Counted from the first letter of the stretch, positions 9,663 through 23,825 are shown. The stretch: 64,000 nucleotides of DNA from IMGVR_UViG_3300042891_000711:1-64000, one strand, 5' to 3'. A program made the numbers and translations. Notes: generated by a model from the sequence alone, not told the origin.

Positions 9663-10202
9663 ATGAGTTTTTCGGTTATGCTTGATTTAGAAACACTAAG
9701 TACCCGCCCAGAAGCAACTATCTTAACATTTGGCGCTATTAAGTTTAGCCCATACAATCAAGAGCCTATGACAGATGGTATCTACTATCGTATTAATGTT
9801 GATGAACAAATTGAGTTAGGTAGCCATGTAGACGAAAACACTGTAGCATGGTGGGGCACCCAAGCAGAAGATGTGCGTGAAGAAGCACTTAGTCCTGAGA
9901 ACCGTATTAGCCTAGAAGAGTTCACACAAAACTTAAATCGTTTCCTAGTAGGTGCTGACAATATTTGGGCACAAGGTCCGGTGTTTGATATTGTTATTTT
10001 AGAAAACTTATACAGACGATTGGGCAAACCTTGTCCATGGCAGTTCTGGCAGATCCGTGATAGTCGTACTTTGTTAAGTAGTCTAGGTGACCCACGTGAA
10101 AAGAACAAAGCAGGCCTGCATAATGCATTAGAAGATGCAGTCAGTCAAGCGCAGGCAGTCCAGTACGTGTTTAAACAAGCCGGAATTACGGAGAAACGAT
10201 AG
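9663..10202 (+). CDS. DEDDh 3'-5' exonuclease (DexA/Rv2179c-like)
   Basis: MLDLETL, WAQGPVFD, RDSRT, HNALEDA. Confidence 0.9.
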   Translation: MSFSVMLDLETLSTRPEATILTFGAIKFSPYNQEPMTDGIYYRINVDEQIELGSHVDENTVAWWGTQAEDVREEALSPENRISLEEFTQNLNRFLVGADNIWAQGPVFDIVILENLYRRLGKPCPWQFWQIRDSRTLLSSLGDPREKNKAGLHNALEDAVSQAQAVQYVFKQAGITEKR

Positions 10203-10522
10203 TGGAAATTATATTTGGTAGAGAAAACGCAGAAAAACTGCGTGAAAAGTACACTGTATTAGATTTAGAAACAGTTGAGCGAGATGGTGCAAGTCTTGAA
10301 GTATTTTGCCTAATTCCTGCTGATAAAATTAGCCTAGGTGATTTGCCTACGCTAGAACAATACACTAATCTACATGCAGAATTTTTACAAGGTTATAAGA
10401 ATAAACACTACGACTACTGTCGTCAGTGCATCACTTACCTAATGGGTAAGTTCTCCGGTGAAGTTGATACATTCTATGAAGAAATACTACGTAGAATTGA
10501 TCTAGAAGACCCTCCAAAGTAA
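10202..10522 (+). CDS. stand-alone homolog of the C-terminal region of the CHASE2 adenylate cyclase
   Basis: aligns by eye with the last ~110 aa of CDS 21801-23825; GTG start. Confidence 0.6.
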   Translation: MEIIFGRENAEKLREKYTVLDLETVERDGASLEVFCLIPADKISLGDLPTLEQYTNLHAEFLQGYKNKHYDYCRQCITYLMGKFSGEVDTFYEEILRRIDLEDPPK

Positions 10523-10542
10523 TACTATAAGTTAATTATATC

Positions 10543-10576
10543 AGAGCCCCCGTTAAATAATAATAACCGGGGCTTT
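10543..10576 (+). promoter_or_regulatory. hairpin with a late promoter in its loop, upstream of csgF
   Basis: AGAGCCCC-C-GTT...AAC-C-GGGGCTTT with TAAATA at 10554-10559. Confidence 0.55.
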
Positions 10577-10579
10577 CGC

Positions 10580-11077
10580 ATGAACAAACGTATGGTCTGC
10601 AATCTTTTATTGGTCGTCACGTTGACTGCTAGCGTTAATATTGCCAAGGCTGGCGAAATGGTGCACACATTCAGTAGCCCGGCATTCAGCGGACAGGGCT
10701 TTGGAATACATGCCCTTACGATTAAACAATTAGAAGATCAGGCCAAGGACAAGCGTGAATCTGCGGCAGAAGCTATACAGGCCAAAGCAGAATCTGCTGC
10801 ATTGAATACTCCGCAGGCTAGATTCATTGCTAACTTAGAATCAAGAATTTATAGTCAACTAGCAAAACAGCTAACTGACAGCATGTTTGGTGAAGGTGCT
10901 ACCTGTACTACAGCAGGAGTGGTATGCGGTAATATACCAAACCTGGGCGGTAACAGTATCGAGTGGAGTCTAGGCGCAGGTAGCGATAGTGGATTAATTA
11001 TTATTACTATACAGGATCTGGCTAATGTTGATAATGTAACAACAATGAAAGTGCCAGCAGGGACCTTTTACTTCTAA
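10580..11077 (+). CDS. csgF: curli assembly protein CsgF-like
   Basis: signal peptide, mature N-terminus GEMVHTFSSPAFSG, F..NLESRIYSQLA; directly upstream of csgG. Confidence 0.75.
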   Translation: MNKRMVCNLLLVVTLTASVNIAKAGEMVHTFSSPAFSGQGFGIHALTIKQLEDQAKDKRESAAEAIQAKAESAALNTPQARFIANLESRIYSQLAKQLTDSMFGEGATCTTAGVVCGNIPNLGGNSIEWSLGAGSDSGLIIITIQDLANVDNVTTMKVPAGTFYF

Positions 11078-11943
11078 TGAAAAAGTTATTAATTCTTTTA
11101 TTAGCAGTAACATTAGGCGGATGTGCCACGGGTAGTGTGATTCGTGAAAAAGTCACAGGTGAACAATTTGATAAACCTGAAGTAGTACGTGAAACATACT
11201 TTACTAAACCGGAGAATAGAGTATTGCCTCCAGCAGGCGGTCCTGTTCCTATAGCAGTGTATAGTTTCTTAGATAAAACAGGACAACGTAAGAATATACC
11301 TAACGTGGCTAGTTTTAGTACAGCAGTATCGCAGGGTGCAGAAGCATACTTAATCGGCGCCTTACAAGATGTAGGCGACCAACGTTGGTTTACTGTGTTA
11401 GAACGTGTAGGGTTAGACAACTTGATTAAAGAACGTCAGATGATTCGTCAGATGCGTGAACAATATCAAGGTAGAGAAGCCAAGTCATTACCACCAATGA
11501 TGTTTGCTGGTGTTATTGTTGAGGGAAGTGTAACAGGCTACGATAGTAACCTGCTTACAGGTGGTAGTGGTATGCGTATTTTGGGTATAGGAGCTCAAAC
11601 ACAATACCAAAGTGACACGGTTACAGTTACTCTAAGAACAGTAAGCGTTAATACAGGTGAAGTATTAACAACTGTAACAGTTACTAAAACAGTATTAAGC
11701 TACATGGATAAATTTGGTATATTAAAGTTTGTTGAAGAAGGCACAAAAGCCATTGAAGCTGAATCTGGTATGAGTATTAACGAAAGTGTCAATAAGGCAA
11801 CTAATCTAGCAGTCAAAGCAGCTGTGGTTGCTACTATTCGAGAAGGAGTTCGAAAAGGGCATTGGGCATTTAAGGAAGAGCCTAAGCCTGTAGTACAAAC
11901 AGATGGTATAACATATCCGCTGTTAGAAACAAAAAAACAATAA
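11077..11943 (+). CDS. csgG: curli secretion pore lipoprotein CsgG
   Basis: lipobox LGGC, AVYSFLDKTGQRK, FSTAVSQG, WFTVLERVGLDNLIKERQMIR. Confidence 0.93.
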   Translation: MKKLLILLLAVTLGGCATGSVIREKVTGEQFDKPEVVRETYFTKPENRVLPPAGGPVPIAVYSFLDKTGQRKNIPNVASFSTAVSQGAEAYLIGALQDVGDQRWFTVLERVGLDNLIKERQMIRQMREQYQGREAKSLPPMMFAGVIVEGSVTGYDSNLLTGGSGMRILGIGAQTQYQSDTVTVTLRTVSVNTGEVLTTVTVTKTVLSYMDKFGILKFVEEGTKAIEAESGMSINESVNKATNLAVKAAVVATIREGVRKGHWAFKEEPKPVVQTDGITYPLLETKKQ

Positions 11944-11967
11944 TAGGATTTTAAAAATCCAAGGAGC

Positions 11968-12759
11968 ATGACAATGAAATATAATTTAAAAGCAACGGTA
12001 AGTATGATGTTTTTAGCTTTGTCAACGTCGGTAATAGCCGCAGGTCCAACAGGCCCTAACCGTGTTTACATTGAACAATTGGGTAACACCAATAATGTTA
12101 CAATTGAACAGGTTGGCGGAACTAACGATGTTGGTGGTACTGCTGGTAGTGTAGCAGTTGACGCAACAGGTCTAAGTACACTAACAGTAACAGCACCAAG
12201 TACTAGTAACTATGCTACAATCAACGGTAGCAATAATGGTGTTACTATAACGCAAACTGGTGATGATAACCAAGCGCAGTATAATATTAAAGGTGGTACT
12301 AACACCTATACAAGTACTGTAACTGGTAGCGGCAATCAAAATAAACTTACTATTGGTAACACCAACACTAACGGTATGCGTAATACTGTTACTGAGTCAG
12401 TTACAGGTAGTACTAATATGTTGATTACTAATATTGTTGGCAGTGATAATGCGTTATCAACTACTATTGGCGGCGATAATAACCAATTAACCATTGGTGT
12501 AACTACTAGCAATGCCGATATTACTAACACTATTAGTGGTAGCAACAATATATTTAATATACAACAAATTGATGCTGCAGGCAGTGCTGGTCATAGTTTA
12601 ATTACATCAACTACAGGTGACTACAACAGTATTACCACACAGCAACAAGGTACAAATGATACTACATTGAACATTAGTACAACTGGTGATCATAATACGA
12701 TTACAGTACGTTCAAGCAGCGGTGCTATAGTAAGCCCAGTATCAGCAATAGTGAGATAG
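11968..12759 (+). CDS. secreted curlin-like beta-solenoid repeat protein
   Basis: signal peptide; repeated N-x-x-x-I-x-Q-x-G-x-x-N units. Confidence 0.75.
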   Translation: MTMKYNLKATVSMMFLALSTSVIAAGPTGPNRVYIEQLGNTNNVTIEQVGGTNDVGGTAGSVAVDATGLSTLTVTAPSTSNYATINGSNNGVTITQTGDDNQAQYNIKGGTNTYTSTVTGSGNQNKLTIGNTNTNGMRNTVTESVTGSTNMLITNIVGSDNALSTTIGGDNNQLTIGVTTSNADITNTISGSNNIFNIQQIDAAGSAGHSLITSTTGDYNSITTQQQGTNDTTLNISTTGDHNTITVRSSSGAIVSPVSAIVR

Positions 12760-12762
12760 TCA

Positions 12763-13854
12763 ATGAAACTATTGCTTGCCGTGGTATGCTTATTAGCATA
12801 TACCAACAGTTGGGCGGGCATTGGAACTGTAAGCGATACTAAAGGTACCGCTTGTTCAATAGAGCGTGCTAAACAGACCCTGCCTGGCAACAAAGGTGCC
12901 TCCATAGAAAGTATGGATACCTATGTTACAGGCGGCTGTGTTAGCAACATTACATTTAAAGATGACACCAAAGTAAAAATAACAGAAAACAGTCGACTAA
13001 TGATAGACGACTTTGTCTTCGATCCTAAAAAATCTGACGCAGGCAAACTAGCACTTAAAGTAGGCATGGGCACAGTGCGCTATGCCAGCGGTCAAATTGC
13101 TAAGAATAATCCACAACGAGTAGACATTAAAACTCCCACAGCCAGTATTGCTGTTCGTGGTACAGACTTTAACATGACTGTAGACGAAGCCGGTCAGAGT
13201 TTGGTAATTCTTGTGCCTAGTTGTAAAGACGGTGAAAAGATCAAAGAATATGAACTAGAAGAAAACTTATGTAAAGTGGGTAAGATTGAAGTTAGTACAC
13301 TGGCTGGTATAGTTACGTTAGATAAAGCATTTGAAGGTACCTATGTTACATCGGCTAACATGATGCCTAGTCCTCCAGCTATTATTAACACAATTGAAAG
13401 TAAGATTGGTAACAGTCTTATTATCACCCGCCCACCTGAAATTGTCAAGGCTAGTAAAGAAGCAGGTAAAAGCAAACGTGATCTAGAACAAGAAGAATTA
13501 GAAGCTATCCAAGCAAGTCAACTTGCTCAACGTATAGCCAAAGAAGGCGAAGCTAAAGCTACGGTAATGCCTTACAGTTTTGACAGTGGTAAATCAGGAT
13601 GTAATCCATCAATTAACGTCTGCGTCAAGTGGGAAAATCCTGATGGCGACAGTCTACAGGCCAAAGGTCGAGGAATAGCGTTTCGTCAAAGTGAAGATCA
13701 CTATGCGGAAGTTAAAACACAGGGCTACGAAAGTAATACGTCGATTGAAATAACACATGATGATAATATTGCTTCAGCTACAATTGGCTCAGGCGATCCA
13801 GGTGGTAATGTAGTACGTATCAAACAGAATTCTGGAGTGTTAAGACGACAATGA
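12763..13854 (+). CDS. FecR-domain periplasmic protein
   Basis: signal peptide; ITFKDDTKVKITENS, G.VRYASG, IKTPTASIAVRGTDF. Confidence 0.9.
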   Translation: MKLLLAVVCLLAYTNSWAGIGTVSDTKGTACSIERAKQTLPGNKGASIESMDTYVTGGCVSNITFKDDTKVKITENSRLMIDDFVFDPKKSDAGKLALKVGMGTVRYASGQIAKNNPQRVDIKTPTASIAVRGTDFNMTVDEAGQSLVILVPSCKDGEKIKEYELEENLCKVGKIEVSTLAGIVTLDKAFEGTYVTSANMMPSPPAIINTIESKIGNSLIITRPPEIVKASKEAGKSKRDLEQEELEAIQASQLAQRIAKEGEAKATVMPYSFDSGKSGCNPSINVCVKWENPDGDSLQAKGRGIAFRQSEDHYAEVKTQGYESNTSIEITHDDNIASATIGSGDPGGNVVRIKQNSGVLRRQ

Positions 13855-14987
13855 AACGACTCCTTTTAATCTTATTGTTAGTTTGTTCCGATACCCGGGC
13901 AGCAGGAATTACGGGTCTTAATTATCAAAATTATGCCGCAGGCGGTGCGCAACCCTCGTATACTCAAGATGCCAACGGTAACATCACCAATCGCACACTA
14001 TTAAGTACTGGAACTGTAAACACAGTAGGATTAACCACTAGTAGTGGGGCAGGCTTGCCTACTCGCAGTGATGGCTTTATTGTTCGTTTCTATGGTTACA
14101 TTAATATCGCAACAGCAGGCACCTACTACTTTGGCGGACAAGCCGACGACGGTATACGTATTAAAGTTGATGGTGTTTCTGTAGTCGACAGTTGGATTGA
14201 AAGTGGCGGAGCATTTAGACAAAGTAGTTCTATTACATTAGCCGCAGGTGTTGTTGCTGTGGAAGTGATGTTTTACGAGAACGGTGGCGGACAAATGGTT
14301 AACTTTCAGTGGTACACTCCGGGAGCAACAGCATGGGCTATGGTACCCACAGCGTCAACAGCCACCGATAATACCTATTGGGCGCCTGCAGCTCCTGCAC
14401 TATGCTGTGGGGGTAGTTCGTCAAGTTTTAATGCTAGTCCATCTAATGTAACAAAAGTACAGTCATACGCCACAAGGAATACCAATGACAGTCAAGTCTA
14501 CATAGACCAAATTGGTAATGACAATGAGATTACAGTTGATCAAACGGGTACTAAAAATAACTACACAGAATACAATGGTGGTGGTAGTTTCAATACCGTT
14601 AATATCTCACAAACTGGTAATAGTTCAACAACAGCAAACTATGTAGAACTAAATGTCAACGGTGATAGTAATACAGTAAATCTAACACAGCAGAGTACAG
14701 GCGGTGCTAAAGGTATCTACGCTACAGTTAACGATGACAATAATAATGTCACAGTCTTACAAAAAGACAGTGGTAATGCTTACTTAAACTTAAACTTGAG
14801 TGGTGGTAATAAGACAGTGGACATAACTCAACAGGGCAGTGCTAATCACATGGCCGACATTACATTAAGCGGTGCTGGTGCTAGAAGTTTAAACTTAAAT
14901 CAGCAAGGTGCAGTACAACAATTTTATAGTATCAATAGTAGTTGTGCTAGTAGTTGTCAAGCTATAACAGTAATACAGGGGCAATAA
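13851..14987 (+). CDS. secreted PA14 domain plus curlin-like repeat protein
   Basis: FYGYINIATAGTYYF...ADDGIRIKVDG...FYENGGG (PA14), then YIDQIGNDN-type repeats. Confidence 0.8.
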   Translation: MKRLLLILLLVCSDTRAAGITGLNYQNYAAGGAQPSYTQDANGNITNRTLLSTGTVNTVGLTTSSGAGLPTRSDGFIVRFYGYINIATAGTYYFGGQADDGIRIKVDGVSVVDSWIESGGAFRQSSSITLAAGVVAVEVMFYENGGGQMVNFQWYTPGATAWAMVPTASTATDNTYWAPAAPALCCGGSSSSFNASPSNVTKVQSYATRNTNDSQVYIDQIGNDNEITVDQTGTKNNYTEYNGGGSFNTVNISQTGNSSTTANYVELNVNGDSNTVNLTQQSTGGAKGIYATVNDDNNNVTVLQKDSGNAYLNLNLSGGNKTVDITQQGSANHMADITLSGAGARSLNLNQQGAVQQFYSINSSCASSCQAITVIQGQ

Positions 14988-15056
14988 CAGCACTTAACTT
15001 AGCAATTATTAAGTTTAAATATTAAAAACGACATTAAGATCGTAAGGAGCAAGTCT

Positions 15057-17105
15057 ATGAAGAAAATAACATTAGCATTGATGCTAGCGGGTGTATTTGG
15101 TTTGAATCAAGCAATGGCCGCAAATGCAATCATCGAAAATGAATACGTAAGAGCAGGTGTAAACGAAAGTACAGGTACACTAGGATCTGGTGGTGGCACA
15201 CGTCCGGGTCTACAGTATGACAATACAGGTACAAGTACTTGGCCCGGCAACAGTAGCCAAGGCGACTATCTAACACCGGGTAGCCCATTTGAAGGTTACA
15301 CAGTTAGATTAGAAGAAGCTGATGGTACACTAATCCGTTCATATACAAATAACAATACCGGTGGTGCACAAATTTCCGGCGGTGCTTGGGTAACTACTCC
15401 AACTGCTGACAGTGCTGTATGGGCTGCAACTACCAGTGACTTTGGTATTCAAAATACCTACAGCTTACCGGCTGGTCAAAAGTATATTGAAATTGACACA
15501 CAGATTACAGCAAGTATAGCTATACCTAAACTATGGTTTGGCCGCTTTATTGATCCTGATGCTATGCCTATGCCAGGTGATACGAGTGCTACAGACAATG
15601 CACGTGGCTACGGTGCAATTCCAACTACAAACGTAGTGTTTAGCGAAGCAACAGTAAGCCGTTACGCATTAGGTTTATACTCATCAGCAACTAACGTGGG
15701 TACAGGTATTAGCCCTATGTGGACAACTAATCCTAAGGACTACTACACAAACGTTGGCGGATACAATGTAGGTAACGGAGATCATACAATTGGTTTAGGT
15801 TTCTTAATGAGTGGCGTAAGTGCAGGTGACATTGTACACTTTAACTATGCTTATATCTTTGGACCAAGCGCATTTGGTGCGGCTACTTCGGCAGTTAGTG
15901 GTGGCGCTGGTGGTGGTACTCCTGGCACTGTTCCTGGAGGCGGCACGCTAGTTGACGTAGGTTCAGCAACAGATGCAGCGTCGGGTACACCAACACCTCC
16001 TCCTGCTCCAACAGTAACAGGCACAAGCACATCAACTATTACTATTAGCGATGTTACTGCGATAAGTGCAACATTACCAGTTATTACAGCGAGCCTAGCA
16101 CACCATGATGCTACAGAAGCCGCAGGTGTACAAACAATTGCACGTGAAACAACTACTAACGTAACAACTCCAATGGAACGTACATTAGTAACTAAAGTAC
16201 GTACAACCAGCACATGGAGTGATAGTACAACCACATTCGTTGATGCGGCTCCTGTGACTGATGTTACAGTATCGAACAGCGTAGCAACTTCAGTAGCTAA
16301 TGCTAGCTTCGGTGGTCGTGTTGATCAATACACACAATTAGCAGAACTAAACACAGGTATCAATCGTGGCTTAAACTCACAACTATTCCGTAAAGATATG
16401 GTTGATGGAAAGGGTTACAGAATGTACATGGGTGTTGCACATTTAGACAGCGGCGCAGGTAACGGCTATGATGCTAAGTCAGATAAATTTAACATTGGCG
16501 TTGAAAAAGATGTTAAAGCCTACTGGACGTTAGGTGCTCAATATACCAATGTTAATACATCATTAACAGGTGTTGACAGTGCCACTAAACAAAACAAAAA
16601 TCACTTGGGTGCTTATAGTATCTTAACTAAAAATAATTGGATCTTAAAAACAGATTTGGGTCTAGCTGATAACAGTCTTAAATCAAATCGCAACGTAGCG
16701 GGTTTATTCTACAATGCCAGCAGTACTGATGGAAACGATTGGTGGTTAAGTAACCGTGTTTATACTCCTAGCTTAAACGGCTTCCGCCCATACGCAGGTT
16801 ATACATATGGTAAAGATAAACGTGATGCTTACACTGAAACAGGTAGTATACAAAGTGCTAGAACTGTGGCCAGTGTAACTGACACCAATGACTACAGCGA
16901 AATTGGTGTGCGCTATGATAAGACCATTAATAAACTAATATTGTCGGGCGAAGCAGGTGTTTCTAGTGATAGCTACAAAGATATTAAAGGTGAAGTAAGT
17001 TATCTAGTTAATGCACGTAGCAGAATTAGCATAACAGCAAGTAGACAGGAACATAAGGACTTGTCAACTAACCAAATTGGTTTGCAAGGTAAGATAGATT
17101 TTTAA
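15057..17105 (+). CDS. outer-membrane autotransporter-like protein
   Basis: signal peptide, passenger-like domain, Pro/Thr linker, amphipathic beta-strand C-terminus ending in Phe (GKIDF). Confidence 0.7.
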   Translation: MKKITLALMLAGVFGLNQAMAANAIIENEYVRAGVNESTGTLGSGGGTRPGLQYDNTGTSTWPGNSSQGDYLTPGSPFEGYTVRLEEADGTLIRSYTNNNTGGAQISGGAWVTTPTADSAVWAATTSDFGIQNTYSLPAGQKYIEIDTQITASIAIPKLWFGRFIDPDAMPMPGDTSATDNARGYGAIPTTNVVFSEATVSRYALGLYSSATNVGTGISPMWTTNPKDYYTNVGGYNVGNGDHTIGLGFLMSGVSAGDIVHFNYAYIFGPSAFGAATSAVSGGAGGGTPGTVPGGGTLVDVGSATDAASGTPTPPPAPTVTGTSTSTITISDVTAISATLPVITASLAHHDATEAAGVQTIARETTTNVTTPMERTLVTKVRTTSTWSDSTTTFVDAAPVTDVTVSNSVATSVANASFGGRVDQYTQLAELNTGINRGLNSQLFRKDMVDGKGYRMYMGVAHLDSGAGNGYDAKSDKFNIGVEKDVKAYWTLGAQYTNVNTSLTGVDSATKQNKNHLGAYSILTKNNWILKTDLGLADNSLKSNRNVAGLFYNASSTDGNDWWLSNRVYTPSLNGFRPYAGYTYGKDKRDAYTETGSIQSARTVASVTDTNDYSEIGVRYDKTINKLILSGEAGVSSDSYKDIKGEVSYLVNARSRISITASRQEHKDLSTNQIGLQGKIDF

Positions 17106-17131
17106 TAAATTGCCCCGAAAGGGGCTTTTTA
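17100..17131 (+). repeat. 32-bp direct repeat copy 1 (contains stop codon and terminator)
   Basis: TTTTAATAAATTGCCCCGAAAGGGGCTTTTTA, identical to 19488-19519. Confidence 0.95.
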
Positions 17132-17248: not shown

Positions 17249-17282
17249 CAAAAATTTAATCTGTTTGTAACGCTACTGTAAT
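17243..17282 (+). promoter_or_regulatory. Pho-box array (PhoB-type direct repeats)
   Basis: CTGTAAC/ATTTAAT/TTGTAAC/CTGTAAT at 17243, 17254, 17265, 17276, an exact 11-bp period, upstream of phosphate-related genes. Confidence 0.75.
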
Positions 17283-17304
17283 CTTTGTGTGTTTAAATAT
17301 AATT

Positions 17305-18054
17305 ATGACCACAAGATATAAGACCATTTGTATATCCGACTTCCATCTTGGCACTAAAGATGCCAAGGCCGATCTATTAAACAATTTCCTTAAACATCAC
17401 ACCTGCGAAAATTTATTTCTTGTAGGTGACATAATCGACGGCTGGAAAATACAGCAGAACAAATGGCGTTGGCATCAAAGCCATACTAATGTAATACGTA
17501 GGATATTAGGCTATAGTAAACGAGGATGCAATGTAACCTATATAACTGGCAACCATGACGAATTCCTTCGTCCGTTAGTTAGTCATGGTTTTAATCTAGG
17601 TAATATTCGTATGGCCAATCAGGCAGAATACCGTAGTATCGATGGGGAACTATTTCTTATCACACACGGCGACTTGTTTGATGGTGTTACTAGACTAGCA
17701 CCGTGGTTAGGATTTTTAGGTGACAAGATGTATGATGTTGCTTTGTGGTTTAATAACTACTTTAACTTTGCCCGTAGAAAATTAGGGTTTGGTTATTGGA
17801 GTCTGAGTAAGTTTTTAAAAGCTCGTGTTAAAAAAGCAATGGGGTTTGTGTTTAAGTTTGAGCTTACTATGTTACAGTACGCACAAAAACGTGGATACGA
17901 TGGTGTTATCTGCGGACACATACACACACCCGAAATTAAACACATCAACGGCATGATTTATATGAATGACGGCGATTGGGTTGAAAGTTGTAGTGCCCTG
18001 GTAGAAGATTATGAAGGACGCTGGGATATTATATATTGGAATGAAATCAAATAG
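17305..18054 (+). CDS. metallophosphoesterase, PlcP/LpxH2-like (phosphate-starvation phospholipase C family)
   Basis: ISDFHLG, GDIIDGW, GNHDEFLR, HGD, CGHIH, NDGDWVES. Confidence 0.8.
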   Translation: MTTRYKTICISDFHLGTKDAKADLLNNFLKHHTCENLFLVGDIIDGWKIQQNKWRWHQSHTNVIRRILGYSKRGCNVTYITGNHDEFLRPLVSHGFNLGNIRMANQAEYRSIDGELFLITHGDLFDGVTRLAPWLGFLGDKMYDVALWFNNYFNFARRKLGFGYWSLSKFLKARVKKAMGFVFKFELTMLQYAQKRGYDGVICGHIHTPEIKHINGMIYMNDGDWVESCSALVEDYEGRWDIIYWNEIK

Positions 18055-18065
18055 GAGAAAGATGA

Positions 18066-19493
18066 ATGACGATACAACAGGTTAAATCAATAATGTATTA
18101 TGTAGTAATAGCATTTGCGCTATCAATGGCAGGGTTAAAGCAAGCGCATGCCGACAGCACCACTGACATTGTTAACGCACTAGTTATGAAAGGTGTACTT
18201 ACAGAAGAAGAAGGCGCATTATTAAATAAAGGACACAGTGGAGAAACAGGCGCTGCTAAAAAAGAAAAAGACACTACTGTTCATGCGGCTAGTAAAATGA
18301 GCATTCGTGGCTATTTACAAATGCGTAACACTACTATGCTCAGTGGTGATGAAGGAGTTAACCTTTGGTCAGATCGATCTGTAGGTGATAAAAACTCTCT
18401 TGCTGATCAAGACAAAAATTTCTTAATTCGTCGAGCACGTGTGATTATTTCTGGTTCTGCCGGTGACCGTTTAGATTACTACATTCAACCTGACTTTGCT
18501 AGTACAGCAGGTACTACAGGTAACGTAGCGCAATTACGCGATGCTTATGGTGATGTCAACTTGACCAAAGACAAAGTCCACCGCGTTCGTGTTGGACAAA
18601 GTAAAGTACCATATGGCTTTGAAAACTTACAGTCTTCACAAAATCGTCTAGCACTTGATCGTGCTGACGCATTTAATAGTGCGGTACGTGATGAACGTGA
18701 CTTGGGTGCGTTTTACTACTACACACCGGATAATGTGCAAAAACTCTTTAAAGAAATTCAAGATGGCGGACTAAAACACTCAGGCAACTACGGTATGTTT
18801 GGTTTAGGTATATATAACGGCCAAGGTGCTAACCAACAAGATCGTAACGACAACTACCATGTAGTGGCACGTGCTACTTACCCATGGAAAACTGAAAGCG
18901 GTCAAATTTACGAAGCTGGTGTACAGGGTTATACAGGCAAGTATGTAAGAACAGGCAGTGCTTATAGAAAAAATATGGGCAACAATGTCTACGCAACTAA
19001 AACACCAACATTAGAACCAGGCAATACAACTGGATTTAAAGATGAGCGTGTGGGTGTGAGTTTTATGATGTACCCTATGCCTTTCGGTTTGCAAGGTGAG
19101 TGGAACTGGGGTAAAACTCCTGGCTTAGATACTGCTGCTAGTACTGACGGCATTATTAAAGAAACTAATTTAAACGGTGGCTACATTCAAACTATGTATA
19201 AAATTGATAACTTCAAGGTGTTAGATACCAATGGTACATTAATTCCATTTGTTAGATGGCAATACTTTGATGGTGCGTCAAAAGCAGAAACTAACTCACC
19301 AATGAACAAAGTTAACGATTGGGAGTTGGGTGCTGAATGGCAAATTGCTCCAGAAGTTGAACTTGTGGCTTACTATCATATGATGAACCGTAGCAATTTA
19401 GTAACAGGCGCATCAGCTACTACACTAGTAAAACAAGACTATGCTAACTTTAAAGCAGATGCTTTACGGGTTCAGCTACAGTATAACTTTTAA
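18066..19493 (+). CDS. phosphate-selective porin OprO/OprP family
   Basis: signal peptide, LVMKGVLTEEE N-terminus, IRRAR, LRDAY, GQSKVPYGFENLQSS, C-terminal Phe. Confidence 0.85.
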   Translation: MTIQQVKSIMYYVVIAFALSMAGLKQAHADSTTDIVNALVMKGVLTEEEGALLNKGHSGETGAAKKEKDTTVHAASKMSIRGYLQMRNTTMLSGDEGVNLWSDRSVGDKNSLADQDKNFLIRRARVIISGSAGDRLDYYIQPDFASTAGTTGNVAQLRDAYGDVNLTKDKVHRVRVGQSKVPYGFENLQSSQNRLALDRADAFNSAVRDERDLGAFYYYTPDNVQKLFKEIQDGGLKHSGNYGMFGLGIYNGQGANQQDRNDNYHVVARATYPWKTESGQIYEAGVQGYTGKYVRTGSAYRKNMGNNVYATKTPTLEPGNTTGFKDERVGVSFMMYPMPFGLQGEWNWGKTPGLDTAASTDGIIKETNLNGGYIQTMYKIDNFKVLDTNGTLIPFVRWQYFDGASKAETNSPMNKVNDWELGAEWQIAPEVELVAYYHMMNRSNLVTGASATTLVKQDYANFKADALRVQLQYNF

Positions 19494-19519
19494 TAAATTG
19501 CCCCGAAAGGGGCTTTTTA
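19488..19519 (+). repeat. 32-bp direct repeat copy 2 (contains stop codon and terminator)
   Basis: identical to 17100-17131. Confidence 0.95.
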
Positions 19520-19567
19520 TTGGATTAAATAGTAGACAACGGACAAATAAGAGTATAAAATAACTGT

Positions 19568-20359
19568 ATGAAACATATCGGAATTATAGGCTTTGGTTAT
19601 GTAGGCGGCGCAGTCGCAAGTAGCTATGCCAACGAACGAATATTAATCAACGACCCGTACAAATATCCAGATACTTCAATCAGTTATGAAACACTTATGA
19701 AAAAGTGTCGTGTGATATTTGTCTGCGTACCTACTCCGCAATCGGATGATGGCACCTGCAACACCAGCATATTGGAATCGGTATTACAAGGACTAGTGGG
19801 CTACGATGGTTTGGTAATTTGCAAATGTACAGCACCACCCAATGTATATACAAGACTTGAAACAGACCTAGCTCTTAAACTTGTGCATGTTCCAGAATTT
19901 TTAACACAGGCACGTGCAAAGTATGATTATGTTAATCCACATAAAATAGTAGTTGGCTGTAAGAAAAAGTTACGCGACGAAGTTGCTGAAGTATTAATGG
20001 CCAGTGCTATCAACTTTGACCGTGTTAATATTGAATACTGTGACATTGCCACTGCTAGTTTTTTTAAATATTTTGCTAACAATATGTTGGCCATTAAAGT
20101 TGTATTAAACAATGAGTTTAGTGTATTAGCCAGTGCCTTAGATGTAGAGTGGAATGAAGTTGCTCGTATTGCTGCAACTGACTCAAGACTAGGTAATACA
20201 CATTGGGCAGTGCCTGGTCCAGATGGACAAGCTGGATTTGGCGGAGCATGCTTTCCAAAAGACACTGCGGCATTTGCTACAATGGCAAAACCGTATAATA
20301 TACCGTTGTCTGTACTTGATGCAGCTATACAAGCAAACAAGTTAATGAGGGATGAATAA
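19568..20359 (+). CDS. UDP-glucose/GDP-mannose dehydrogenase family, short form lacking the C-terminal domain
   Basis: GIIGFGYVG, CVPTP, PEFL, GFGGACFPKD; own promoter TAGACA-17-TAAAAT. Confidence 0.85.
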   Translation: MKHIGIIGFGYVGGAVASSYANERILINDPYKYPDTSISYETLMKKCRVIFVCVPTPQSDDGTCNTSILESVLQGLVGYDGLVICKCTAPPNVYTRLETDLALKLVHVPEFLTQARAKYDYVNPHKIVVGCKKKLRDEVAEVLMASAINFDRVNIEYCDIATASFFKYFANNMLAIKVVLNNEFSVLASALDVEWNEVARIAATDSRLGNTHWAVPGPDGQAGFGGACFPKDTAAFATMAKPYNIPLSVLDAAIQANKLMRDE

Positions 20360-20427
20360 TGATAGGATCATTAATATCAGTAATGGTAATTGGTATAATA
20401 GTAATGATTGTAGCAATATTTCACTAA
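20359..20427 (+). CDS. 22-aa hydrophobic peptide (not in ORF track)
   Basis: MIGSLISVMVIGIIVMIVAIFH; coupled by TAATG overlap. Confidence 0.35.
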   Translation: MIGSLISVMVIGIIVMIVAIFH

Positions 20428-20561
20428 AATACGAGAAATTTAGCTGTCTTTAATGATTTTACGTATGTTTTTTCACCGTTTTAGGTGCTACTATATGTAT
20501 AAGTACTAGTAACAACAAAACATGTTGTGGTACTTTTTAATAATTTACTAGGAGAAATACT

Positions 20562-20633
20562 ATGTGGACTAAACCAGCAGCTACTGAAATGCGTTTCGGT
20601 TTTGAAGTAACTATGTATGTAATGAACAAGTAA
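20562..20633 (+). CDS. pqqA: PQQ precursor peptide PqqA (not in ORF track)
   Basis: MWTKPAATEMRFGFEVTMYVMNK with E-x-x-x-Y core; AGGAG SD; own terminator. Confidence 0.95.
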   Translation: MWTKPAATEMRFGFEVTMYVMNK

Positions 20634-20655
20634 TTTATTGTTCCGTACTGCAATA

Positions 20656-20679
20656 ACAAAAGCCCTTCGGGGCTTTTGT
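20656..20679 (+). terminator. intrinsic terminator after pqqA
   Basis: ACAAAAGCCC-TTCG-GGGCTTTTGT. Confidence 0.85.
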
Positions 20680-20693
20680 CACGAATACGGGTT

Positions 20694-20759
20694 ATAAATT
20701 TTTTTAATGATAGGTATAAGAAAATTTAATTAGACAAGTGAAGTTAATAAGTGTAGTAT
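20694..20759 (+). promoter_or_regulatory. OxyR-type site abutting the sigma70 promoter of ahpC
   Basis: ATAA-N7-TAAT-N7-ATAA-N7-TAAT (20694-20730), then TAGACA-17-TAGTAT. Confidence 0.65.
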
Positions 20760-20783
20760 ATAATTTTAATCAAGGAGAAATAA

Positions 20784-21350
20784 ATGAGTTTAATCGGAAA
20801 ACAAGTAGAAGAATTTAAAGCACAAGCATACCAACAGGGTAAGTTTGTAGAAGTATCAGAGCAAGACTTAAAAGGTAAATGGAGTGTGTTATTCTTTTAT
20901 CCAGCAGACTTTACATTTGTCTGCCCAACAGAATTAGCAGACCTACAAGACGTATACGCAAGTGACTTCAAAGGCTTAGGCGTTGAAGTATACAGTGTAA
21001 GCACAGACACACACTTTGTACACAAAGCATGGGCAGATGCTACAGACACAATCCGTAACATCACCTACACAATGATTGGTGATGCTAACCATCAGTTGGC
21101 TCGTCAATTTGGTGTGCTAATTGAAAGCGAAGGCTTAGCCGACCGCGGTACGTTTGTTATTGATCCAGATGGTGTAGTACAGATCATTGAGATCAATCCA
21201 GGTGGTGTAGGTCGCGATGCTAAAGAGTTGCTACGTAAAGTTAAAGCAGCAAAATACACACGTGAACATCCAGGTGAAGTATGCCCGGCTAAATGGCAAG
21301 AAGGAAGTGCTACACTAGCACCAAGTTTGGATTTAGTAGGTAAACTATAA
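20784..21350 (+). CDS. ahpC: alkyl hydroperoxide reductase C (2-Cys peroxiredoxin)
   Basis: [13 protein letters not shown] and GEVCPAKW. Confidence 0.97.
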
Positions 21351-21353
21351 AAC

Positions 21354-21380
21354 AAAAAGCCCCAATTAAGGGGCTTTTTT
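21354..21380. terminator. bidirectional terminator
   Basis: AAAAAGCCCC-AATTAA-GGGGCTTTTTT between convergent genes. Confidence 0.85.
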
Positions 21381-21381
21381 A

Positions 21382-21681
21382 TTACTGCGTCAACACCCAT
21401 TTAACGAGCGTTTTAATATCCTCGTCTTTGATCTGTGGACTCATTGGCGGCATTGGAATAGGACCCCATACTCCACTACCACCTTTCTTAACTTTGGCTA
21501 TAAGTTTAGCCTCTGCGTCAGCTTGACCTTTATATTTGGCAGCAACATCTCGATACGCCGGACCTAATATTTTTTTATCAACTGCGTGGCAAGCTAAACA
21601 GCCACTTTTCTGTGCCAATGCCTGATTAGCATTTGCTGTGATACAACTACCTAATAATAATACTGCTAAAATAGTTTTCAT
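21382..21681 (-). CDS. cytochrome c551/c552 (class I c8, cytochrome cH-like)
   Basis: signal peptide, CLACH heme motif, GPAY, GGSGVWGPIPMPP with axial Met. Confidence 0.93.
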   Translation of the reverse strand: MKTILAVLLLGSCITANANQALAQKSGCLACHAVDKKILGPAYRDVAAKYKGQADAEAKLIAKVKKGGSGVWGPIPMPPMSPQIKDEDIKTLVKWVLTQ

Positions 21682-21800
21682 TTTGATCCTTTCATAAAAA
21701 TTGTACCTGCATAGTATTTAACATCTATGTAAGAAAGAAGTTTATTTTTTTTGATTGAATTTCTCTTGACAAAAAACCCAAAAGAGTAAATAATAGTAAT

Positions 21801-23825
21801 ATGATGAAAAATAAACTTAAAAAACTCCTAGTCAGTCCGTGGACTGCATTAATTACATTAGCTGTTATTGTGGTAGTAATCCTACAAGGACCTACGTTTG
21901 TAGAGTCAGTTAGACTTAGATACTTTGACACCCTCATTGGCGGCAAGGCTCCTACAGAAAATAATATCTATACTGTAAACATAGATGAAGCTACATTAGA
22001 CAAGTATGGACAATGGCCATTCAAACGTGACAAGTATGCCAACCTAATTGATGACCTGTACAAACATGGCGCCGGCCTAGTTGTTTGGACTGTTATGATG
22101 CCAGAAGCAGATCGTCAAGGTGGCGATGCGGCCTTAGCATTAGAGTTAGAAGATCATCCAGTTATCTTAACTAACATGCCAAGTCAAACAACTAAAAACA
22201 TTCCACGTAAACCAGGCAGTGCTGTTATTGGTGATGAATACAGCGACACAATTATCACCTATCCAGGTATTATTGCTAACATTCCGGAACTAGAACGTAA
22301 TGCCGCAGGTGTTGGTATTGCTAATACGTTTCCAGAAGTGGATGGTGTTAATCGTCGACTACCATTGTTTGTTGGTTATGACAATAACGTATATCCAAGT
22401 ATTCCATTAGAAGTATTACGTGTTATATCACAGGACTCAACTTTCCAAGTTAAGTTAAATGAATTTGGTGTAGAGAAAATGCGCATACCAAGTTTCCGTC
22501 CTATTAGCACAGACAGTTTGGGTCGTATCTGGGTAGACTGGAGTCAAAAGTCGACACAGGTATCAGCAGTTAATTTACCTAAAGACTTTGGTGGTGCTGT
22601 GGTTATTGTAGGCCTAAGTGCCGCAGGTTTAGCTAATCCTGTGCCAACTAGTATCGGTAGTGTATGGCCACAAGACATGCAGGCCGCTGTTATTGGCACA
22701 CTTGCTAACAACGTAAACATTGAACGTCCATTCTGGGCAGACAACGCCGAACTGTTAGCTCTTATTGTTATCTCACTTATTATTTTAATCTTAAGCCGTT
22801 GGGTATATGTTGGCTTAGGAGTTGGTGTTGTATTGCTTGCGGCAATTACACCTGTAACAATGTATGCGTTTGCACACTATAACTTCTTGTTTGATGCTAT
22901 TGTGCCCACAGCAGGTGGTGTACTGGTTATGCTACACGCTTATGGTGTTAAATTCATCAGCGAGTTCTTACAGAAACAACAGATCAAGAAACAATTTGGT
23001 AGTTATGTCAACCCTACTATTGTTGAACGTTTACAAAAGAATCCAGAGCTGATTAAACTAGGCGGCGAACGTAAAGAACTTTCAATTGTTATGACTGACC
23101 TACGTGGCTTTACTACATTAGGTGAATCGTTTGGTGATGATGTAGAAGGACTTACACAGATCATGAACGACTACATGACCGCATTGAGTATTCCTGTGCT
23201 TAAGAATGATGGTACTTTAATTAAGTTTATTGGTGATGCTAGTTTACACGTACATGGTGCTCCATTAGACGATGTTGACCACGCTAAGACTGCGGTTAAG
23301 ACAGCACTTGAAATGATCAAAGCCATTGAAGACTTTAACGTAGAACTTACAGCTAGTGGTCGACCGCCGGTTGGTATGGGTGCAGGTGTTAACACAGGTG
23401 AAACCTTAATTGGTAATATTGGTGCTAAGAGCAAGTTTGGCTATGATGTCTTAGGTGACAGTGTAAGTACTGCGGCACGGTTAGAAGGACAGACTAAATC
23501 ATATGGTGTATTACTAATCATTGGTCCTAAGACTGCTGAATACTGTAAAGATGCGTTCCCTGTAGTATGGTTAGACAACATTGCTGTTAAAGGCAAAACA
23601 ATTGGTCTAGACATTTACACAGTTGGCCGTACTAATCTTTATATGCATGAAGAATATCGTAAAGAATATACTCGAGGTTCATGGAGTAAGGCTATTGTAT
23701 GGGCTAAAAAGTTAGTTAACAATGATGATGTTGACATTAAACATTACTATGAACTAATGATTGAACGCATGGAACAGGGTGTTCCTGCAAACTGGGACGG
23801 AACATATCATGCTACAAGTAAATAA
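21801..23825 (+). CDS. CHASE2-domain class III adenylate cyclase
   Basis: VNIDEATLDKYGQWPF and DGVNRRLPL (CHASE2); three TMs; TDLRGFT, KFIGDA, YDVLGDSVSTAARLEG. Confidence 0.93.
   Translation: MMKNKLKKLLVSPWTALITLAVIVVVILQGPTFVESVRLRYFDTLIGGKAPTENNIYTVNIDEATLDKYGQWPFKRDKYANLIDDLYKHGAGLVVWTVMMPEADRQGGDAALALELEDHPVILTNMPSQTTKNIPRKPGSAVIGDEYSDTIITYPGIIANIPELERNAAGVGIANTFPEVDGVNRRLPLFVGYDNNVYPSIPLEVLRVISQDSTFQVKLNEFGVEKMRIPSFRPISTDSLGRIWVDWSQKSTQVSAVNLPKDFGGAVVIVGLSAAGLANPVPTSIGSVWPQDMQAAVIGTLANNVNIERPFWADNAELLALIVISLIILILSRWVYVGLGVGVVLLAAITPVTMYAFAHYNFLFDAIVPTAGGVLVMLHAYGVKFISEFLQKQQIKKQFGSYVNPTIVERLQKNPELIKLGGERKELSIVMTDLRGFTTLGESFGDDVEGLTQIMNDYMTALSIPVLKNDGTLIKFIGDASLHVHGAPLDDVDHAKTAVKTALEMIKAIEDFNVELTASGRPPVGMGAGVNTGETLIGNIGAKSKFGYDVLGDSVSTAARLEGQTKSYGVLLIIGPKTAEYCKDAFPVVWLDNIAVKGKTIGLDIYTVGRTNLYMHEEYRKEYTRGSWSKAIVWAKKLVNNDDVDIKHYYELMIERMEQGVPANWDGTYHATSK

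What the first reader, a model, noticed from the sequence alone, without database searches (positions are those of the whole stretch)
10202..23825. Candidate phage trans-envelope cAMP signalling system: CsgF-CsgG-curlin-FecR-PA14/curlin-beta-barrel plus CHASE2 adenylate cyclase
Seen: a tight late operon (10580-17105) of six exported proteins: CsgF-like, CsgG lipoprotein pore, curlin-like solenoid, FecR-domain protein, PA14 lectin fused to curlin-like repeats, and an autotransporter-like barrel. A CHASE2/TM/class III cyclase lies 4.7 kb downstream, and a free copy of the cyclase tail sits directly before csgF. Known: CsgG/F secrete and anchor curlin. In bacteria, CHASE2 cyclases often co-occur with FecR-domain and outer-membrane proteins, as in the Sinorhizobium CyaD/NsrA surface-sensing cascade. 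From memory, csgF/csgG in aquatic myophages have been read as structural or lysis genes. Inference: this may instead be a surface sensor on the infected cell (glycan-binding curlin-like filament, CsgG, FecR, CHASE2, cAMP) that reports contact or superinfection and tunes host metabolism or lysis timing.
Basis: partly seen in the sequence, partly recalled or inferred. Interest (0 to 1): 0.85.

Follow-up and report, generated by a model that had tools for sequence, protein, structure and literature searches.

The report
Phage curli-type fibre module with receptor cyclase
A large aquatic phage carries a bacterial gene set for sticky, lectin-tipped curli-like surface fibres, linked to a membrane receptor enzyme that makes cAMP; the set was already described in marine phages, but what it does is still unknown.

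Summary
Window 10202-23825 encodes signal-peptide-bearing CsgF, CsgG (lipoprotein), a curlin-repeat protein, a FecR-fold protein, a PA14-curlin fusion and a type Va autotransporter, packed tightly and closed by a terminator. A CHASE2/class III adenylate cyclase lies 4.7 kb downstream. A free paralogue of the cyclase C-terminal subdomain sits before csgF (hhalign 98.9%).

The link between cyclase and csg genes is real. In Melnitz, HTVC008M and most of about 160 related viral loci, the order csgF-csgG-curlin-FecR-curlin-cyclase is contiguous or nearly so. It survives inversions. The same order occurs in chromosomal contigs of Henriciella and Caulobacteraceae MAGs.

It is not new. Wittmers et al. 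2022 described this viral T8SS module with FecR and an adenylate cyclase. New here:
- the cyclase is a CHASE2 receptor, so its input is periplasmic;
- a bacterial counterpart operon exists;
- the second curlin subunit has swappable lectin heads (PA14 or discoidin);
- there is a free tail paralogue and an autotransporter insert.

"Late operon" is unsupported. Outside-in signalling (fibre/CsgG to FecR to CHASE2 to cAMP) is plausible but untested. The S. meliloti FecR-domain precedent argues against a perception role. Verdict: new member of a known kind, with a testable hypothesis.

The parts
10202..10522 (+). 106-aa cytoplasmic protein (no signal peptide). It is a free-standing paralogue of the cyclase C-terminal subdomain: the last strands of the catalytic domain plus a three-helix tail.
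   Evidence: hhalign of A6 against A7: 98.9% probability, E 1.3e-17. tblastn hits the cyclase tails of relatives. Conserved as an ORF before csgF in at least 14 relatives.
10580..11077 (+). CsgF-like protein with a signal peptide
   Evidence: PF10614, 4.9e-11; phrog_35372; signal peptide
11077..11943 (+). CsgG outer-membrane lipoprotein channel
   Evidence: PF03783, 1.4e-49; lipobox LGGC; 44-47% identity to Melnitz and HTVC008M CsgG
11968..12759 (+). Secreted curlin-repeat protein 1 (CsgA/B-like)
   Evidence: PF07012, 21.4 bits against a cut-off of 20.7; signal peptide and N-x-[VI]-x-[IV]-x-Q-x-G repeats; homologous to the C-terminal half of the PA14 protein
12763..13854 (+). Secreted FecR-fold protein: beta domain at residues 21-200, a helical linker, and a small C-terminal beta domain. 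It has no transmembrane anchor.
   Evidence: PF04773, 1.2e-10. AF2 model pLDDT 74.5, about 90 in the FecR domain. Foldseek hits to 4m0h and 6ovk (PupR), E about 1e-4. Signal peptide.
13851..14987 (+). Secreted PA14 lectin head fused to curlin repeats (fibre subunit 2). The head domain is exchangeable among relatives.
   Evidence: PA14 6.8e-12 and Curlin_rpt 23.1 bits. Among 53 homologues: PA14 in 12, F5/8 type C in 16-17, Curlin_rpt in 17.
15057..17105 (+). Type Va autotransporter: signal peptide, passenger of unknown function, G/T/P-rich linker, beta-domain. Accessory; present in only some relatives.
   Evidence: PF03797, 3.2e-16 on the last 307 aa; sequence features; scattered presence
17112..17125 (+). 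Terminator-like hairpin GCCCCGAAAGGGGC followed by a T-run, closing the operon. An identical copy lies at 19500-19513.
17287..21681 (.). Variable insert between the cassette and the cyclase. It holds an LpxH-like metallophosphoesterase (17287-18054), an OprO/P-type porin (18066-19493), a truncated UDP-glucose dehydrogenase (19568-20359), a peroxiredoxin (20784-21350) and a cytochrome c (21382-21681, minus strand).
   Evidence: Pfam; NCBIfam. Absent from Melnitz and HTVC008M, where the cyclase abuts the cassette. Content and order vary in close relatives.
21801..23825 (+). CHASE2 receptor class III adenylate cyclase. Layout: TM 6-39, periplasmic CHASE2, three TMs at 310-380, catalytic domain 425-600, helical tail to 674.
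   Evidence: Pfam; topology. Catalytic residues D433, K475, D479, D549 and R560 present; Asn replaced by Ser. AF2 model pLDDT 86.9. Foldseek TM about 0.87 to CyaC and CyaB.
25764..26096 (-). Small protein with a TM segment and a coiled coil (phrog_18771). Homologue of Melnitz gp98 and HTVC008M gp012, which sit directly before csgF in those phages.
27581..27862 (-). Paralogue of the above (phrog_18771). Homologue of Melnitz gp97 and HTVC008M gp011.

Best explanation
This is a mobile envelope module of alphaproteobacterial origin, carried by a large T4-like aquatic phage.

Shown by sequence:
- The infected cell is given a complete curli-type (type VIII) export unit, CsgG plus CsgF.
- It is also given two Sec-exported curlin-repeat subunits. 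One carries a PA14 lectin head, which is replaced by a discoidin head in relatives.
- There is a soluble periplasmic FecR-fold protein.
- There is an inner-membrane adenylate cyclase whose sensor domain (CHASE2) faces the periplasm.

Inferred:
- The subunits are secreted through CsgG/F and form glycan-binding fibres on the infected cell.
- The FecR-fold protein has the fold that, in FecR/PupR, clamps an outer-membrane partner's periplasmic domain. It co-varies most tightly with CsgG and CsgF. It is proposed to bridge the outer-membrane secretion complex and the CHASE2 domain.
- Fibre or secretion status, or fibre engagement, would then set cAMP synthesis in the cytoplasm.
- The free tail paralogue (10202-10522) is a candidate cytoplasmic modulator of the cyclase.

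What cAMP then controls (host CRP regulon, phage timing) is unknown.

In this window the ancestral contiguous cassette has been split by a 6.8-kb insert of other envelope and redox genes, counting the accessory autotransporter.
For: - Domain content and export signals.
- Contiguous csgF-csgG-curlin-FecR-curlin-cyclase in Melnitz and HTVC008M.
- The same order in most of about 160 viral loci. FecR in 63 of 63; cyclase in 39 of 44 plus 3 further along the same contig; csgG or FecR within 10 kb of 29 of 34 cyclase-anchored loci, 3 of them inverted.
- The same cassette in Henriciella (397-kb contig) and Caulobacteraceae MAG contigs. Flanks are metabolic genes and GC matches the flanks; one contig has a SpdA/CpdA-like phosphodiesterase next to csgF.
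- Cyclase catalytic residues are of the adenylyl type and invariant across 12 diverse members.
- The catalytic fold is confirmed.
- The FecR model matches PupR and an anti-sigma periplasmic domain.
- Identity matrices of csgG, csgF and fecR correlate at r = 0.81-0.91.
- Lectin heads on the second curlin subunit.
- Literature: FecR-domain genes lie next to CHASE2 kinases in Burkholderiales and P. aeruginosa (PMC5192318). CHASE2 cyclases of S. meliloti are activated through an outer-membrane beta-barrel protein (PMC13001267, PMC7529298).
Against: - No interaction, fibre or cAMP has been measured for any member.
- FecR co-varies far better with CsgG/F (r about 0.9) than with CHASE2 (r = 0.41). 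Gene adjacency alone could explain the former.
- In S. meliloti the FecR-domain protein next to the cyclase locus is not required for signal perception and is a cAMP-Clr target (PMC5498481).
- The window's cyclase subtype has Ser in place of the transition-state Asn.
- No cNMP-binding or CRP protein was found among 48 other ORFs of the window, and the host is unknown.
- Buchholz et al. saw no clumping of Melnitz-infected cells (PMC9004378).
- The Curlin_rpt hits are only just above threshold.
Confidence: 0.45

Rival explanations
1. Published reading (Wittmers et al. 2022). The cluster is a functional T8SS that makes curli fibres for aggregation ('sibling capture') or for shielding against superinfection. 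FecR, the cyclase and the small 'HK' proteins are regulators of the T8SS. Information would flow from some other cue, such as iron, through cAMP to fibre production, rather than from the fibre to cAMP.
For: PMC9599517. There are complete export and subunit genes with lectin heads, consistent with adhesion. In S. meliloti the FecR-domain protein acts downstream of cAMP.
Against: The genes sit in one tight phage operon with no cAMP-responsive regulator in the window. The FecR protein here has a cleavable signal peptide and no anti-sigma or TM part, so it cannot itself signal to the cytoplasm. The 'HK' proteins show no kinase similarity.
Confidence: 0.25
2. CsgG/F has been repurposed as a gated pore, a pinholin- or secretin-like device that times lysis (Buchholz et al. 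2022), or as an uptake channel (Zaragoza-Solas et al. 2020). The other genes would be accessory.
For: PMC9004378 and PMC7029224. No CsgE-like gate was detected in the cassette.
Against: Curlin-repeat substrates with signal peptides are always present. The same cassette lies in bacterial chromosomes, where lysis timing is irrelevant. CsgG is an outer-membrane lipoprotein, not an inner-membrane holin. Those papers did not recognise the subunit genes, FecR or the cyclase.
Confidence: 0.08
3. The cyclase and the csg/fecR genes are unrelated auxiliary genes that merely share a hypervariable island. The cyclase would raise cAMP on its own to reprogramme host metabolism.
For: The region is an island of variable accessory genes. 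Cyclase identity correlates only weakly with csgG/fecR (r = 0.3-0.4), and CHASE2 against the catalytic domain gives only 0.31, which points to independent recombination.
Against: Linkage holds across 37-100% identity, across podo- and myophages (PMC9599517), across inversions, and in bacterial chromosomes.
Confidence: 0.07
4. The proteins are virion or structural components.
For: The module lies next to tail and baseplate genes in Melnitz and HTVC008M.
Against: Every cassette protein has a Sec signal peptide or lipobox, and the cyclase is a polytopic membrane protein. Bacterial homologues lie in non-phage contexts.
Confidence: 0.02

Closest known systems
Viral T8SS (curli) module of pelagiphages: HTVC008M gp014-019, Melnitz genes 99-104, and HTVC023P-type podophages (Wittmers et al. 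2022, PMC9599517; Zaragoza-Solas et al. 2020; Buchholz et al. 2022)
   Same: Same genes in the same order (CsgF, CsgG, curlin, FecR, curlin, adenylate cyclase). Identity is 37-47% for CsgG and the cyclase. The same pair of small membrane proteins is nearby.
   Different: The cyclase is displaced 6.8 kb from the PA14-curlin gene by an insert that includes an autotransporter. The small membrane-protein pair has moved downstream onto the opposite strand. There is an extra free paralogue of the cyclase tail before csgF. The phage is a 219-kb contig from a different, apparently very abundant, clade.
Alphaproteobacterial curli operons (csgG-csgF-curlin, no csgE/C/D)
   Same: CsgG and CsgF are closest to alphaproteobacterial versions. 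Curlin-repeat subunits are present and CsgE/CsgD are absent (PMC9599517).
   Different: About 60 of the 80 nearest bacterial csgG loci lack FecR and the CHASE2 cyclase. Only the Henriciella MAG and two Caulobacteraceae MAGs carry the full cassette.
S. meliloti NsrA - CyaD1/CyaD2/CyaK (CHASE2 cyclases) - Clr cascade
   Same: A CHASE2 receptor adenylate cyclase is activated by an extracellular cue through an outer-membrane protein. A FecR-domain gene and a class III phosphodiesterase lie in the cyclase neighbourhood (PMC13001267, PMC5498481; for the SpdA-like gene in L164).
   Different: That system has no CsgG/F or curlin. Its FecR-domain protein SMc02177 is not needed for perception. No Clr/CRP homologue was seen in the window.
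FecR/PupR cell-surface signalling and FecR-LysM + CHASE2 histidine kinase operons of Burkholderiales and P. aeruginosa
   Same: The FecR periplasmic fold is shared. A FecR-domain gene sits adjacent to a CHASE2 sensor (PMC5192318).
   Different: The protein here is soluble and exported, with no anti-sigma domain, no TM and no LysM. The output is a cyclase, not a kinase or an ECF sigma factor.
Synechocystis Cya2 (PDB 2w01, 6fht)
   Same: Best sequence match for the catalytic domain (2.2e-26).
   Different: Cya2 has Glu/Gly at the base-specifying positions (guanylyl). The phage enzyme has Lys/Asp (adenylyl). Its C-terminal helical tail has no solved counterpart.

Membership tests
Type VIII (curli) secretion system | CsgG outer-membrane lipoprotein channel | tested here: met
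   PF03783, 1.4e-49; lipobox LGGC
Type VIII (curli) secretion system | CsgF accessory protein with a signal peptide | tested here: met
   PF10614, 4.9e-11, 43.4 bits against a cut-off of 25.8; signal peptide
Type VIII (curli) secretion system | Secreted curlin-repeat subunits (CsgA/CsgB type) | tested here: met
   PF07012 at 21.4 and 23.1 bits, just above the 20.7 cut-off. 17 of 53 homologues of subunit 2 also match. Visible Q-x-G-x-x-N repeats and signal peptides.
Type VIII (curli) secretion system | CsgE gate, CsgC/H chaperone, CsgD regulator (gammaproteobacterial type) | tested here: not met
   No such Pfam hits among the cassette ORFs. This is the same as in alphaproteobacterial operons (PMC9599517).
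Type VIII (curli) secretion system | Amyloid fibre on the cell surface | not testable with these tools
   Needs microscopy or dye binding. Buchholz et al. saw no clumping (PMC9004378).
CHASE2 receptor class III adenylate cyclase | TM - extracytoplasmic CHASE2 - TMs - cyclase homology domain | tested here: met
   PF05226 1.4e-36, PF00211 9.6e-18; hydrophobic segments at 6-39 and 310-380
CHASE2 receptor class III adenylate cyclase | Catalytic residues: two metal Asp, Lys/Asp base pair, transition-state Asn and Arg | tested here: inconclusive
   D433, D479, K475, D549 and R560 are present. The Asn is replaced by Ser in the window, Melnitz and L125; other relatives keep the Asn.
CHASE2 receptor class III adenylate cyclase | cAMP synthesis | not testable with these tools
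   Needs an enzyme assay or complementation of a cya-deficient laboratory strain.
FecR/PupR anti-sigma cell-surface signalling | FecR periplasmic domain fold | tested here: met
   PF04773, 1.2e-10; Foldseek hits to 4m0h and 6ovk, E 1e-4 to 4e-4
FecR/PupR anti-sigma cell-surface signalling | Cytoplasmic anti-sigma domain and a single TM anchor | tested here: not met
   There is a cleavable signal peptide and no other hydrophobic segment.
FecR/PupR anti-sigma cell-surface signalling | Partner TonB-dependent transducer and ECF sigma factor | tested here: not met
   Neither appears among the Pfam hits of the window's ORFs.
Viral T8SS-FecR-cyclase module (Wittmers et al. 2022) | Gene set and order: small membrane proteins, CsgF, CsgG, curlin, FecR, curlin, cyclase | tested here: met
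   All members are present. The order is kept, except that the cyclase is displaced by an insert and the small-protein pair lies downstream on the minus strand.
Type Va autotransporter (the 682-aa protein) | Signal peptide, passenger, C-terminal 12-strand beta-domain | tested here: met
   PF03797, 3.2e-16, 60.3 bits against a cut-off of 26 on residues 376-682; signal peptide and terminal Phe
NsrA-CyaD-Clr type cAMP cascade | cAMP receptor (Clr/CRP) encoded with or near the system | tested here: not met
   No cNMP-binding or Crp family among 48 further ORFs of the window. The rest of the 219-kb genome and the host were not examined.

The most novel reading that the evidence does not exclude
The module is an outside-in contact sensor. 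A curli-type fibre with exchangeable lectin heads acts as an antenna. Its engagement or assembly state passes through CsgG/F and the soluble FecR-fold protein to the CHASE2 domain and is converted into cAMP. If so, this would give CHASE2 its first defined periplasmic partner. It would also show a phage installing a complete surface-to-second-messenger pathway in its host, shared with a few Caulobacterales.
Probability: 0.25. Interest if true: 0.85.

Novelty: new member of a known kind. Interest (0 to 1): 0.5.

Why it matters
Relatives of this module are very abundant in aquatic viromes. More than 6,400 FecR clusters at 90% identity were found, and Wittmers et al. report about 0.1% of assembled viral proteins in the Global Ocean Viromes (GOV2.0) data set. 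Three papers call its function unknown or a mystery.

Three points turn a descriptive puzzle into a defined hypothesis:
- the cyclase is a periplasm-facing receptor;
- the FecR protein has the fold of a trans-periplasmic coupler;
- the full cassette also exists in bacterial chromosomes.

The hypothesis can be tested with cultured systems (Melnitz with OM43, HTVC008M with SAR11) or by reconstitution in E. coli. It also bears on the still unknown input of CHASE2 domains.

Tried and rejected
- Nucleotide search of the region against GenBank phages found only a 38-bp chance match. Protein-level searches were needed.
- BLASTP of the 106-aa ORF against the window's own cyclase was not significant. 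The profile comparison settled it.
- Pfam on the full 682-aa protein, and phmmer and profile searches of PDB with it, found nothing. Only the isolated C-terminal part matched the autotransporter model.
- Idea tested: the window's metallophosphoesterase is a cAMP phosphodiesterase. Rejected. Its best (weak) matches are LpxH-like, and it resembles the SpdA/CpdA-like gene of the bacterial cassette only at superfamily level.
- The 'histidine kinase' label for the small membrane proteins could not be supported.
- The search for a T4-type late promoter before csgF was negative. Sigma-70-like and terminator scans are at chance level overall.
It was repeated without them.
- The protein database search with FecR returned only close phage-type relatives and gave no bacterial context.
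- No cAMP-binding protein was found in the window.
- Several 'bacterial' MAG hits (L163, L166, L168-170, L175, L178, L239) were set aside as probable phage contigs, because they are short and have 34-40% GC.

Full report
**What is in the sequence**

The window is positions 1-64000 of a 218.9-kb IMG/VR viral contig. It carries tail-fibre-like genes, DnaK, Hsp20, GroES/EL, ClpP/ClpS, DNA ligase and a permuted tmRNA.

Between 9663 and 17105 the plus strand is packed with genes, separated by -4 to 69 nt:
- 9663-10202: an Rv2179c-like exoribonuclease;
- 10202-10522: a 106-aa ORF;
- 10580-11077: CsgF;
- 11077-11943: CsgG;
- 11968-12759: a curlin-repeat protein;
- 12763-13854: a FecR-domain protein;
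- 13851-14987: a PA14-curlin fusion;
- 15057-17105: a 682-aa protein.

A GC hairpin with a T-run follows at 17112-17125. CsgF, CsgG (lipobox LGGC), both curlin proteins, the FecR protein and the 682-aa protein all start with signal peptides.

The 682-aa protein is a type Va autotransporter. Its last 307 residues match PF03797 at 3.2e-16, as do 6 of 8 homologues. All homologues have signal peptides and nearly all end in Phe.

After a variable stretch comes the cyclase at 21801-23825. The stretch holds an LpxH-like metallophosphoesterase, an OprO/P-type porin, a truncated Ugd, a peroxiredoxin and an antisense cytochrome c. The cyclase has one TM, a periplasmic CHASE2 domain, three TMs, a class III cyclase domain and a 75-residue tail.

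The exception is 'late': no T4-type late promoter motif precedes csgF, and the promoter scans are at chance level.

**The cyclase**

The best solved relatives are Cya2, CyaB, the photoactivated cyclases and CyaC. In an alignment of 12 diverse phage and bacterial members:
- the two metal aspartates (D433, D479), the base-specifying lysine (K475) and the transition-state arginine (R560) are invariant;
- the second specificity position is Asp (window, Melnitz, L125) or Thr/Ser. Both go with adenylyl specificity, from established knowledge of class III cyclases. Cya2, a guanylyl cyclase, has Glu/Gly at these positions.

One canonical residue, the transition-state Asn, is Ser in the window's subtype. 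Activity is therefore likely but not certain.

An AF2 model of the cytoplasmic part is confident (pLDDT 86.9, pTM 0.86). It superposes on CyaC and CyaB with TM about 0.87. The tail forms three well-predicted helices that have no solved counterpart.

**The free tail copy**

The 106-aa ORF before csgF is conserved as an ORF in at least 14 relatives. By profile-profile comparison it is homologous to the last ~110 residues of the cyclases: the final strands of the catalytic domain plus the helical tail (98.9%, E 1.3e-17). It has no signal peptide.

It is absent from the bacterial cassettes and from Melnitz and HTVC008M. It is therefore a phage-clade innovation. A role as a modulator of the cyclase is inference only.

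**Is the cyclase part of the csg/fecR unit?**

Yes, on the following grounds.
- In Methylophilales phage Melnitz (genes 99-104) and Pelagibacter phage HTVC008M (gp014-019), the six genes csgF, csgG, curlin, FecR, curlin and cyclase are contiguous.
- Among 80 csgG-anchored viral loci, FecR follows in 63 of 63 with enough sequence.
- The cyclase lies within the locus in 39 of 44 loci with at least 9 kb downstream. The median distance from csgG to the cyclase is 5.0 kb. Three of the five exceptions have the cyclase further along the same contig, at up to 19.5 kb.
- Among 34 cyclase-anchored loci with 10 kb on both sides, 29 contain csgG or fecR. In three of these the cassette is inverted, yet still adjacent.

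In this window the ancestral arrangement has been split by an insert. Its content and order differ even among close relatives.

**A bacterial counterpart**

I scanned one genome per species with a CsgG profile. The 80 nearest loci are mostly alphaproteobacterial curli operons without FecR or CHASE2.

A Henriciella MAG (397-kb contig) and two Caulobacteraceae MAGs carry csgF, csgG, curlin(s), FecR and a CHASE2 cyclase in the same order. In the two loci I annotated (L164 and L165), the flanks are ordinary metabolic genes: a TonB-dependent receptor, an FAA hydrolase, a 2OG oxygenase, an amidohydrolase and an acyl-CoA dehydrogenase. Cassette GC (0.51-0.53) is close to that of the flanks, whereas phage-like contigs are 0.34-0.40.

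One of these loci has a metallophosphoesterase directly before csgF. Its best matches are the S. meliloti SpdA and E. coli CpdA cyclic-nucleotide phosphodiesterase models, though below their cut-offs.

[quoted passage not shown] It also argues that the module's primary function is not phage lysis.

**The FecR protein**

The AF2 model (pLDDT 74.5, about 90 over residues 21-200) shows a beta domain. Its closest solved folds are a Bacteroidales anti-sigma periplasmic domain and the PupR C-terminal cell-surface signalling domain, which was solved bound to its outer-membrane partner (E about 1e-4). A helical linker and a lower-confidence C-terminal beta domain follow. The C-terminal domain weakly resembles an adhesin 'cell surface anchoring domain' (E 0.024), which is a hint only.

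Unlike FecR and PupR, this protein has no anti-sigma domain and no TM. It is a soluble periplasmic protein.

Across 70 non-identical loci, the pairwise-identity matrices of CsgF, CsgG and FecR correlate at r = 0.81-0.91. The cyclase domains correlate with them only at 0.31-0.41. CHASE2 against the catalytic domain also gives only 0.31, so the cyclase is mosaic. FecR is therefore most tightly tied to the secretion unit, although adjacency may contribute to that.

**The fibre subunits**

The second curlin-repeat protein has a conserved C-terminal repeat region and a variable head. The head is PA14 in 12 of 53 homologues and F5/8-type-C (discoidin) in 16-17 of 53. In others it is absent or undetected. 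Both PA14 and discoidin are carbohydrate-binding or adhesion modules. This supports a glycan-binding surface fibre whose specificity is exchanged among phages.

**Prior art**

- Zaragoza-Solas et al. 2020 (PMC7029224) reported csgF and csgG in pelagimyophages and proposed uptake or 'sibling capture'.
- Buchholz et al. 2022 (PMC9004378) proposed a pinholin- or secretin-like role in lysis timing.
- Wittmers et al. 2022 (PMC9599517) defined the viral module as HK(s), CsgF, CsgG, CsgA/B, FecR, CsgA/B and adenylate cyclase in podo- and myophages. They inferred an alphaproteobacterial origin and read FecR, the cyclase and HK as regulators.

None of these papers mentions CHASE2. No paper in the library combines CHASE2 with CsgG, or CHASE2 with a phage cyclase. 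The gene cluster itself is therefore known. The receptor-cyclase reading is not found in that literature.

The small 'HK' proteins correspond to a phrog_18771 pair. In this window they lie at 25764-26096 and 27581-27862 on the minus strand. I found no support for a kinase assignment.

**Mechanism**

Shown:
- a complete export unit with substrates;
- a periplasmic FecR-fold protein;
- a periplasm-facing receptor cyclase with adenylyl-type residues;
- conserved linkage of all of these in phages and in bacteria.

Inferred:
- lectin-tipped curlin fibres are assembled on the infected cell;
- the FecR-fold protein links the outer-membrane complex, or the secretion and fibre status, to CHASE2;
- cAMP is the output.

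Two precedents support this. FecR-domain genes sit beside CHASE2 kinases in Burkholderiales and P. aeruginosa (PMC5192318). In S. meliloti, CHASE2 cyclases are activated through the outer-membrane protein NsrA (PMC13001267).

Four points count against it:
- the S. meliloti FecR-domain protein SMc02177 is not needed for perception and is itself a cAMP-Clr target;
- the Asn is replaced by Ser in this cyclase subtype;
- no cAMP receptor was found in the window;
- there are no experimental data at all.

**Verdict**

This is a real and correctly described feature. It is a new, rearranged member of a published viral T8SS-FecR-cyclase module. It adds several details and gives a sharpened, testable hypothesis. 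Interest is moderate.

Noticed in passing
window 25764-26096 (-) and 27581-27862 (-): Two paralogous small proteins, each with a TM segment and a coiled coil (phrog_18771). They are homologues of Melnitz gp97/98 and HTVC008M gp011/012. In nearly every related locus they lie either just before csgF or 2-4 kb beyond the cyclase. They are probably the 'histidine kinases' of Wittmers et al., but no kinase similarity was found.
   Followed up: partly
window 21801-23825 and relatives (A2): The cyclases are mosaic. CHASE2 and catalytic-domain identity matrices correlate only at r = 0.31. There are two catalytic subtypes: Lys/Asp with Ser in place of the transition-state Asn, and Lys/Thr or Lys/Ser with the Asn. 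These do not follow overall similarity. HTVC008M-type cyclases lack the C-terminal tail.
   Followed up: partly
window 17112-17125 and 19500-19513: Identical terminator-like hairpins (GCCCCGAAAGGGGC followed by a T-run) lie after the autotransporter gene and after the porin gene.
   Followed up: no
window 19568-20359 versus 32300-33544: A truncated UDP-glucose dehydrogenase copy (N-terminal and central domains only, 263 aa) lies inside the insert. A full-length copy (414 aa) lies 12 kb downstream.
   Followed up: no
window 23829-25767; loci L084-L103: In many relatives an S11 D-Ala-D-Ala carboxypeptidase gene directly follows the cyclase. In the window a radical SAM gene is inserted between them.
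   Followed up: no
window 42929-43341: A permuted (two-piece) tmRNA gene, as reported for Melnitz.
   Followed up: no
window 4850-7600 and 45094-47002: An unusually rich chaperone and protease set for a phage: DnaK, Hsp20, ClpS-like, GroES and GroEL. ClpP is also present elsewhere in the window.
   Followed up: no
window 18066-19493: A phosphate-selective OprO/P-type porin with a signal peptide lies inside the insert. It is conserved (92-96% identity) in the closest relatives, but in a different order.
   Followed up: no
L164 8230-9090: In the Caulobacteraceae MAG, the gene just upstream of csgF is a metallophosphoesterase. Its best NCBIfam matches are SpdA and CpdA cyclic-nucleotide phosphodiesterases, below their cut-offs. 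Many phage loci carry a different, LpxH-like metallophosphoesterase between the cassette and the cyclase.
   Followed up: partly
window 8870-9757 (-): An HNH/NUMOD3 homing-endonuclease-like gene lies on the opposite strand just upstream of the exoribonuclease gene that leads into the operon.
   Followed up: no
elsewhere in the window (ORF not located): One further ORF outside the cassette matches the PA14 and GLEYA domains. It was not found by tblastn with the cassette's PA14 head.
   Followed up: partly
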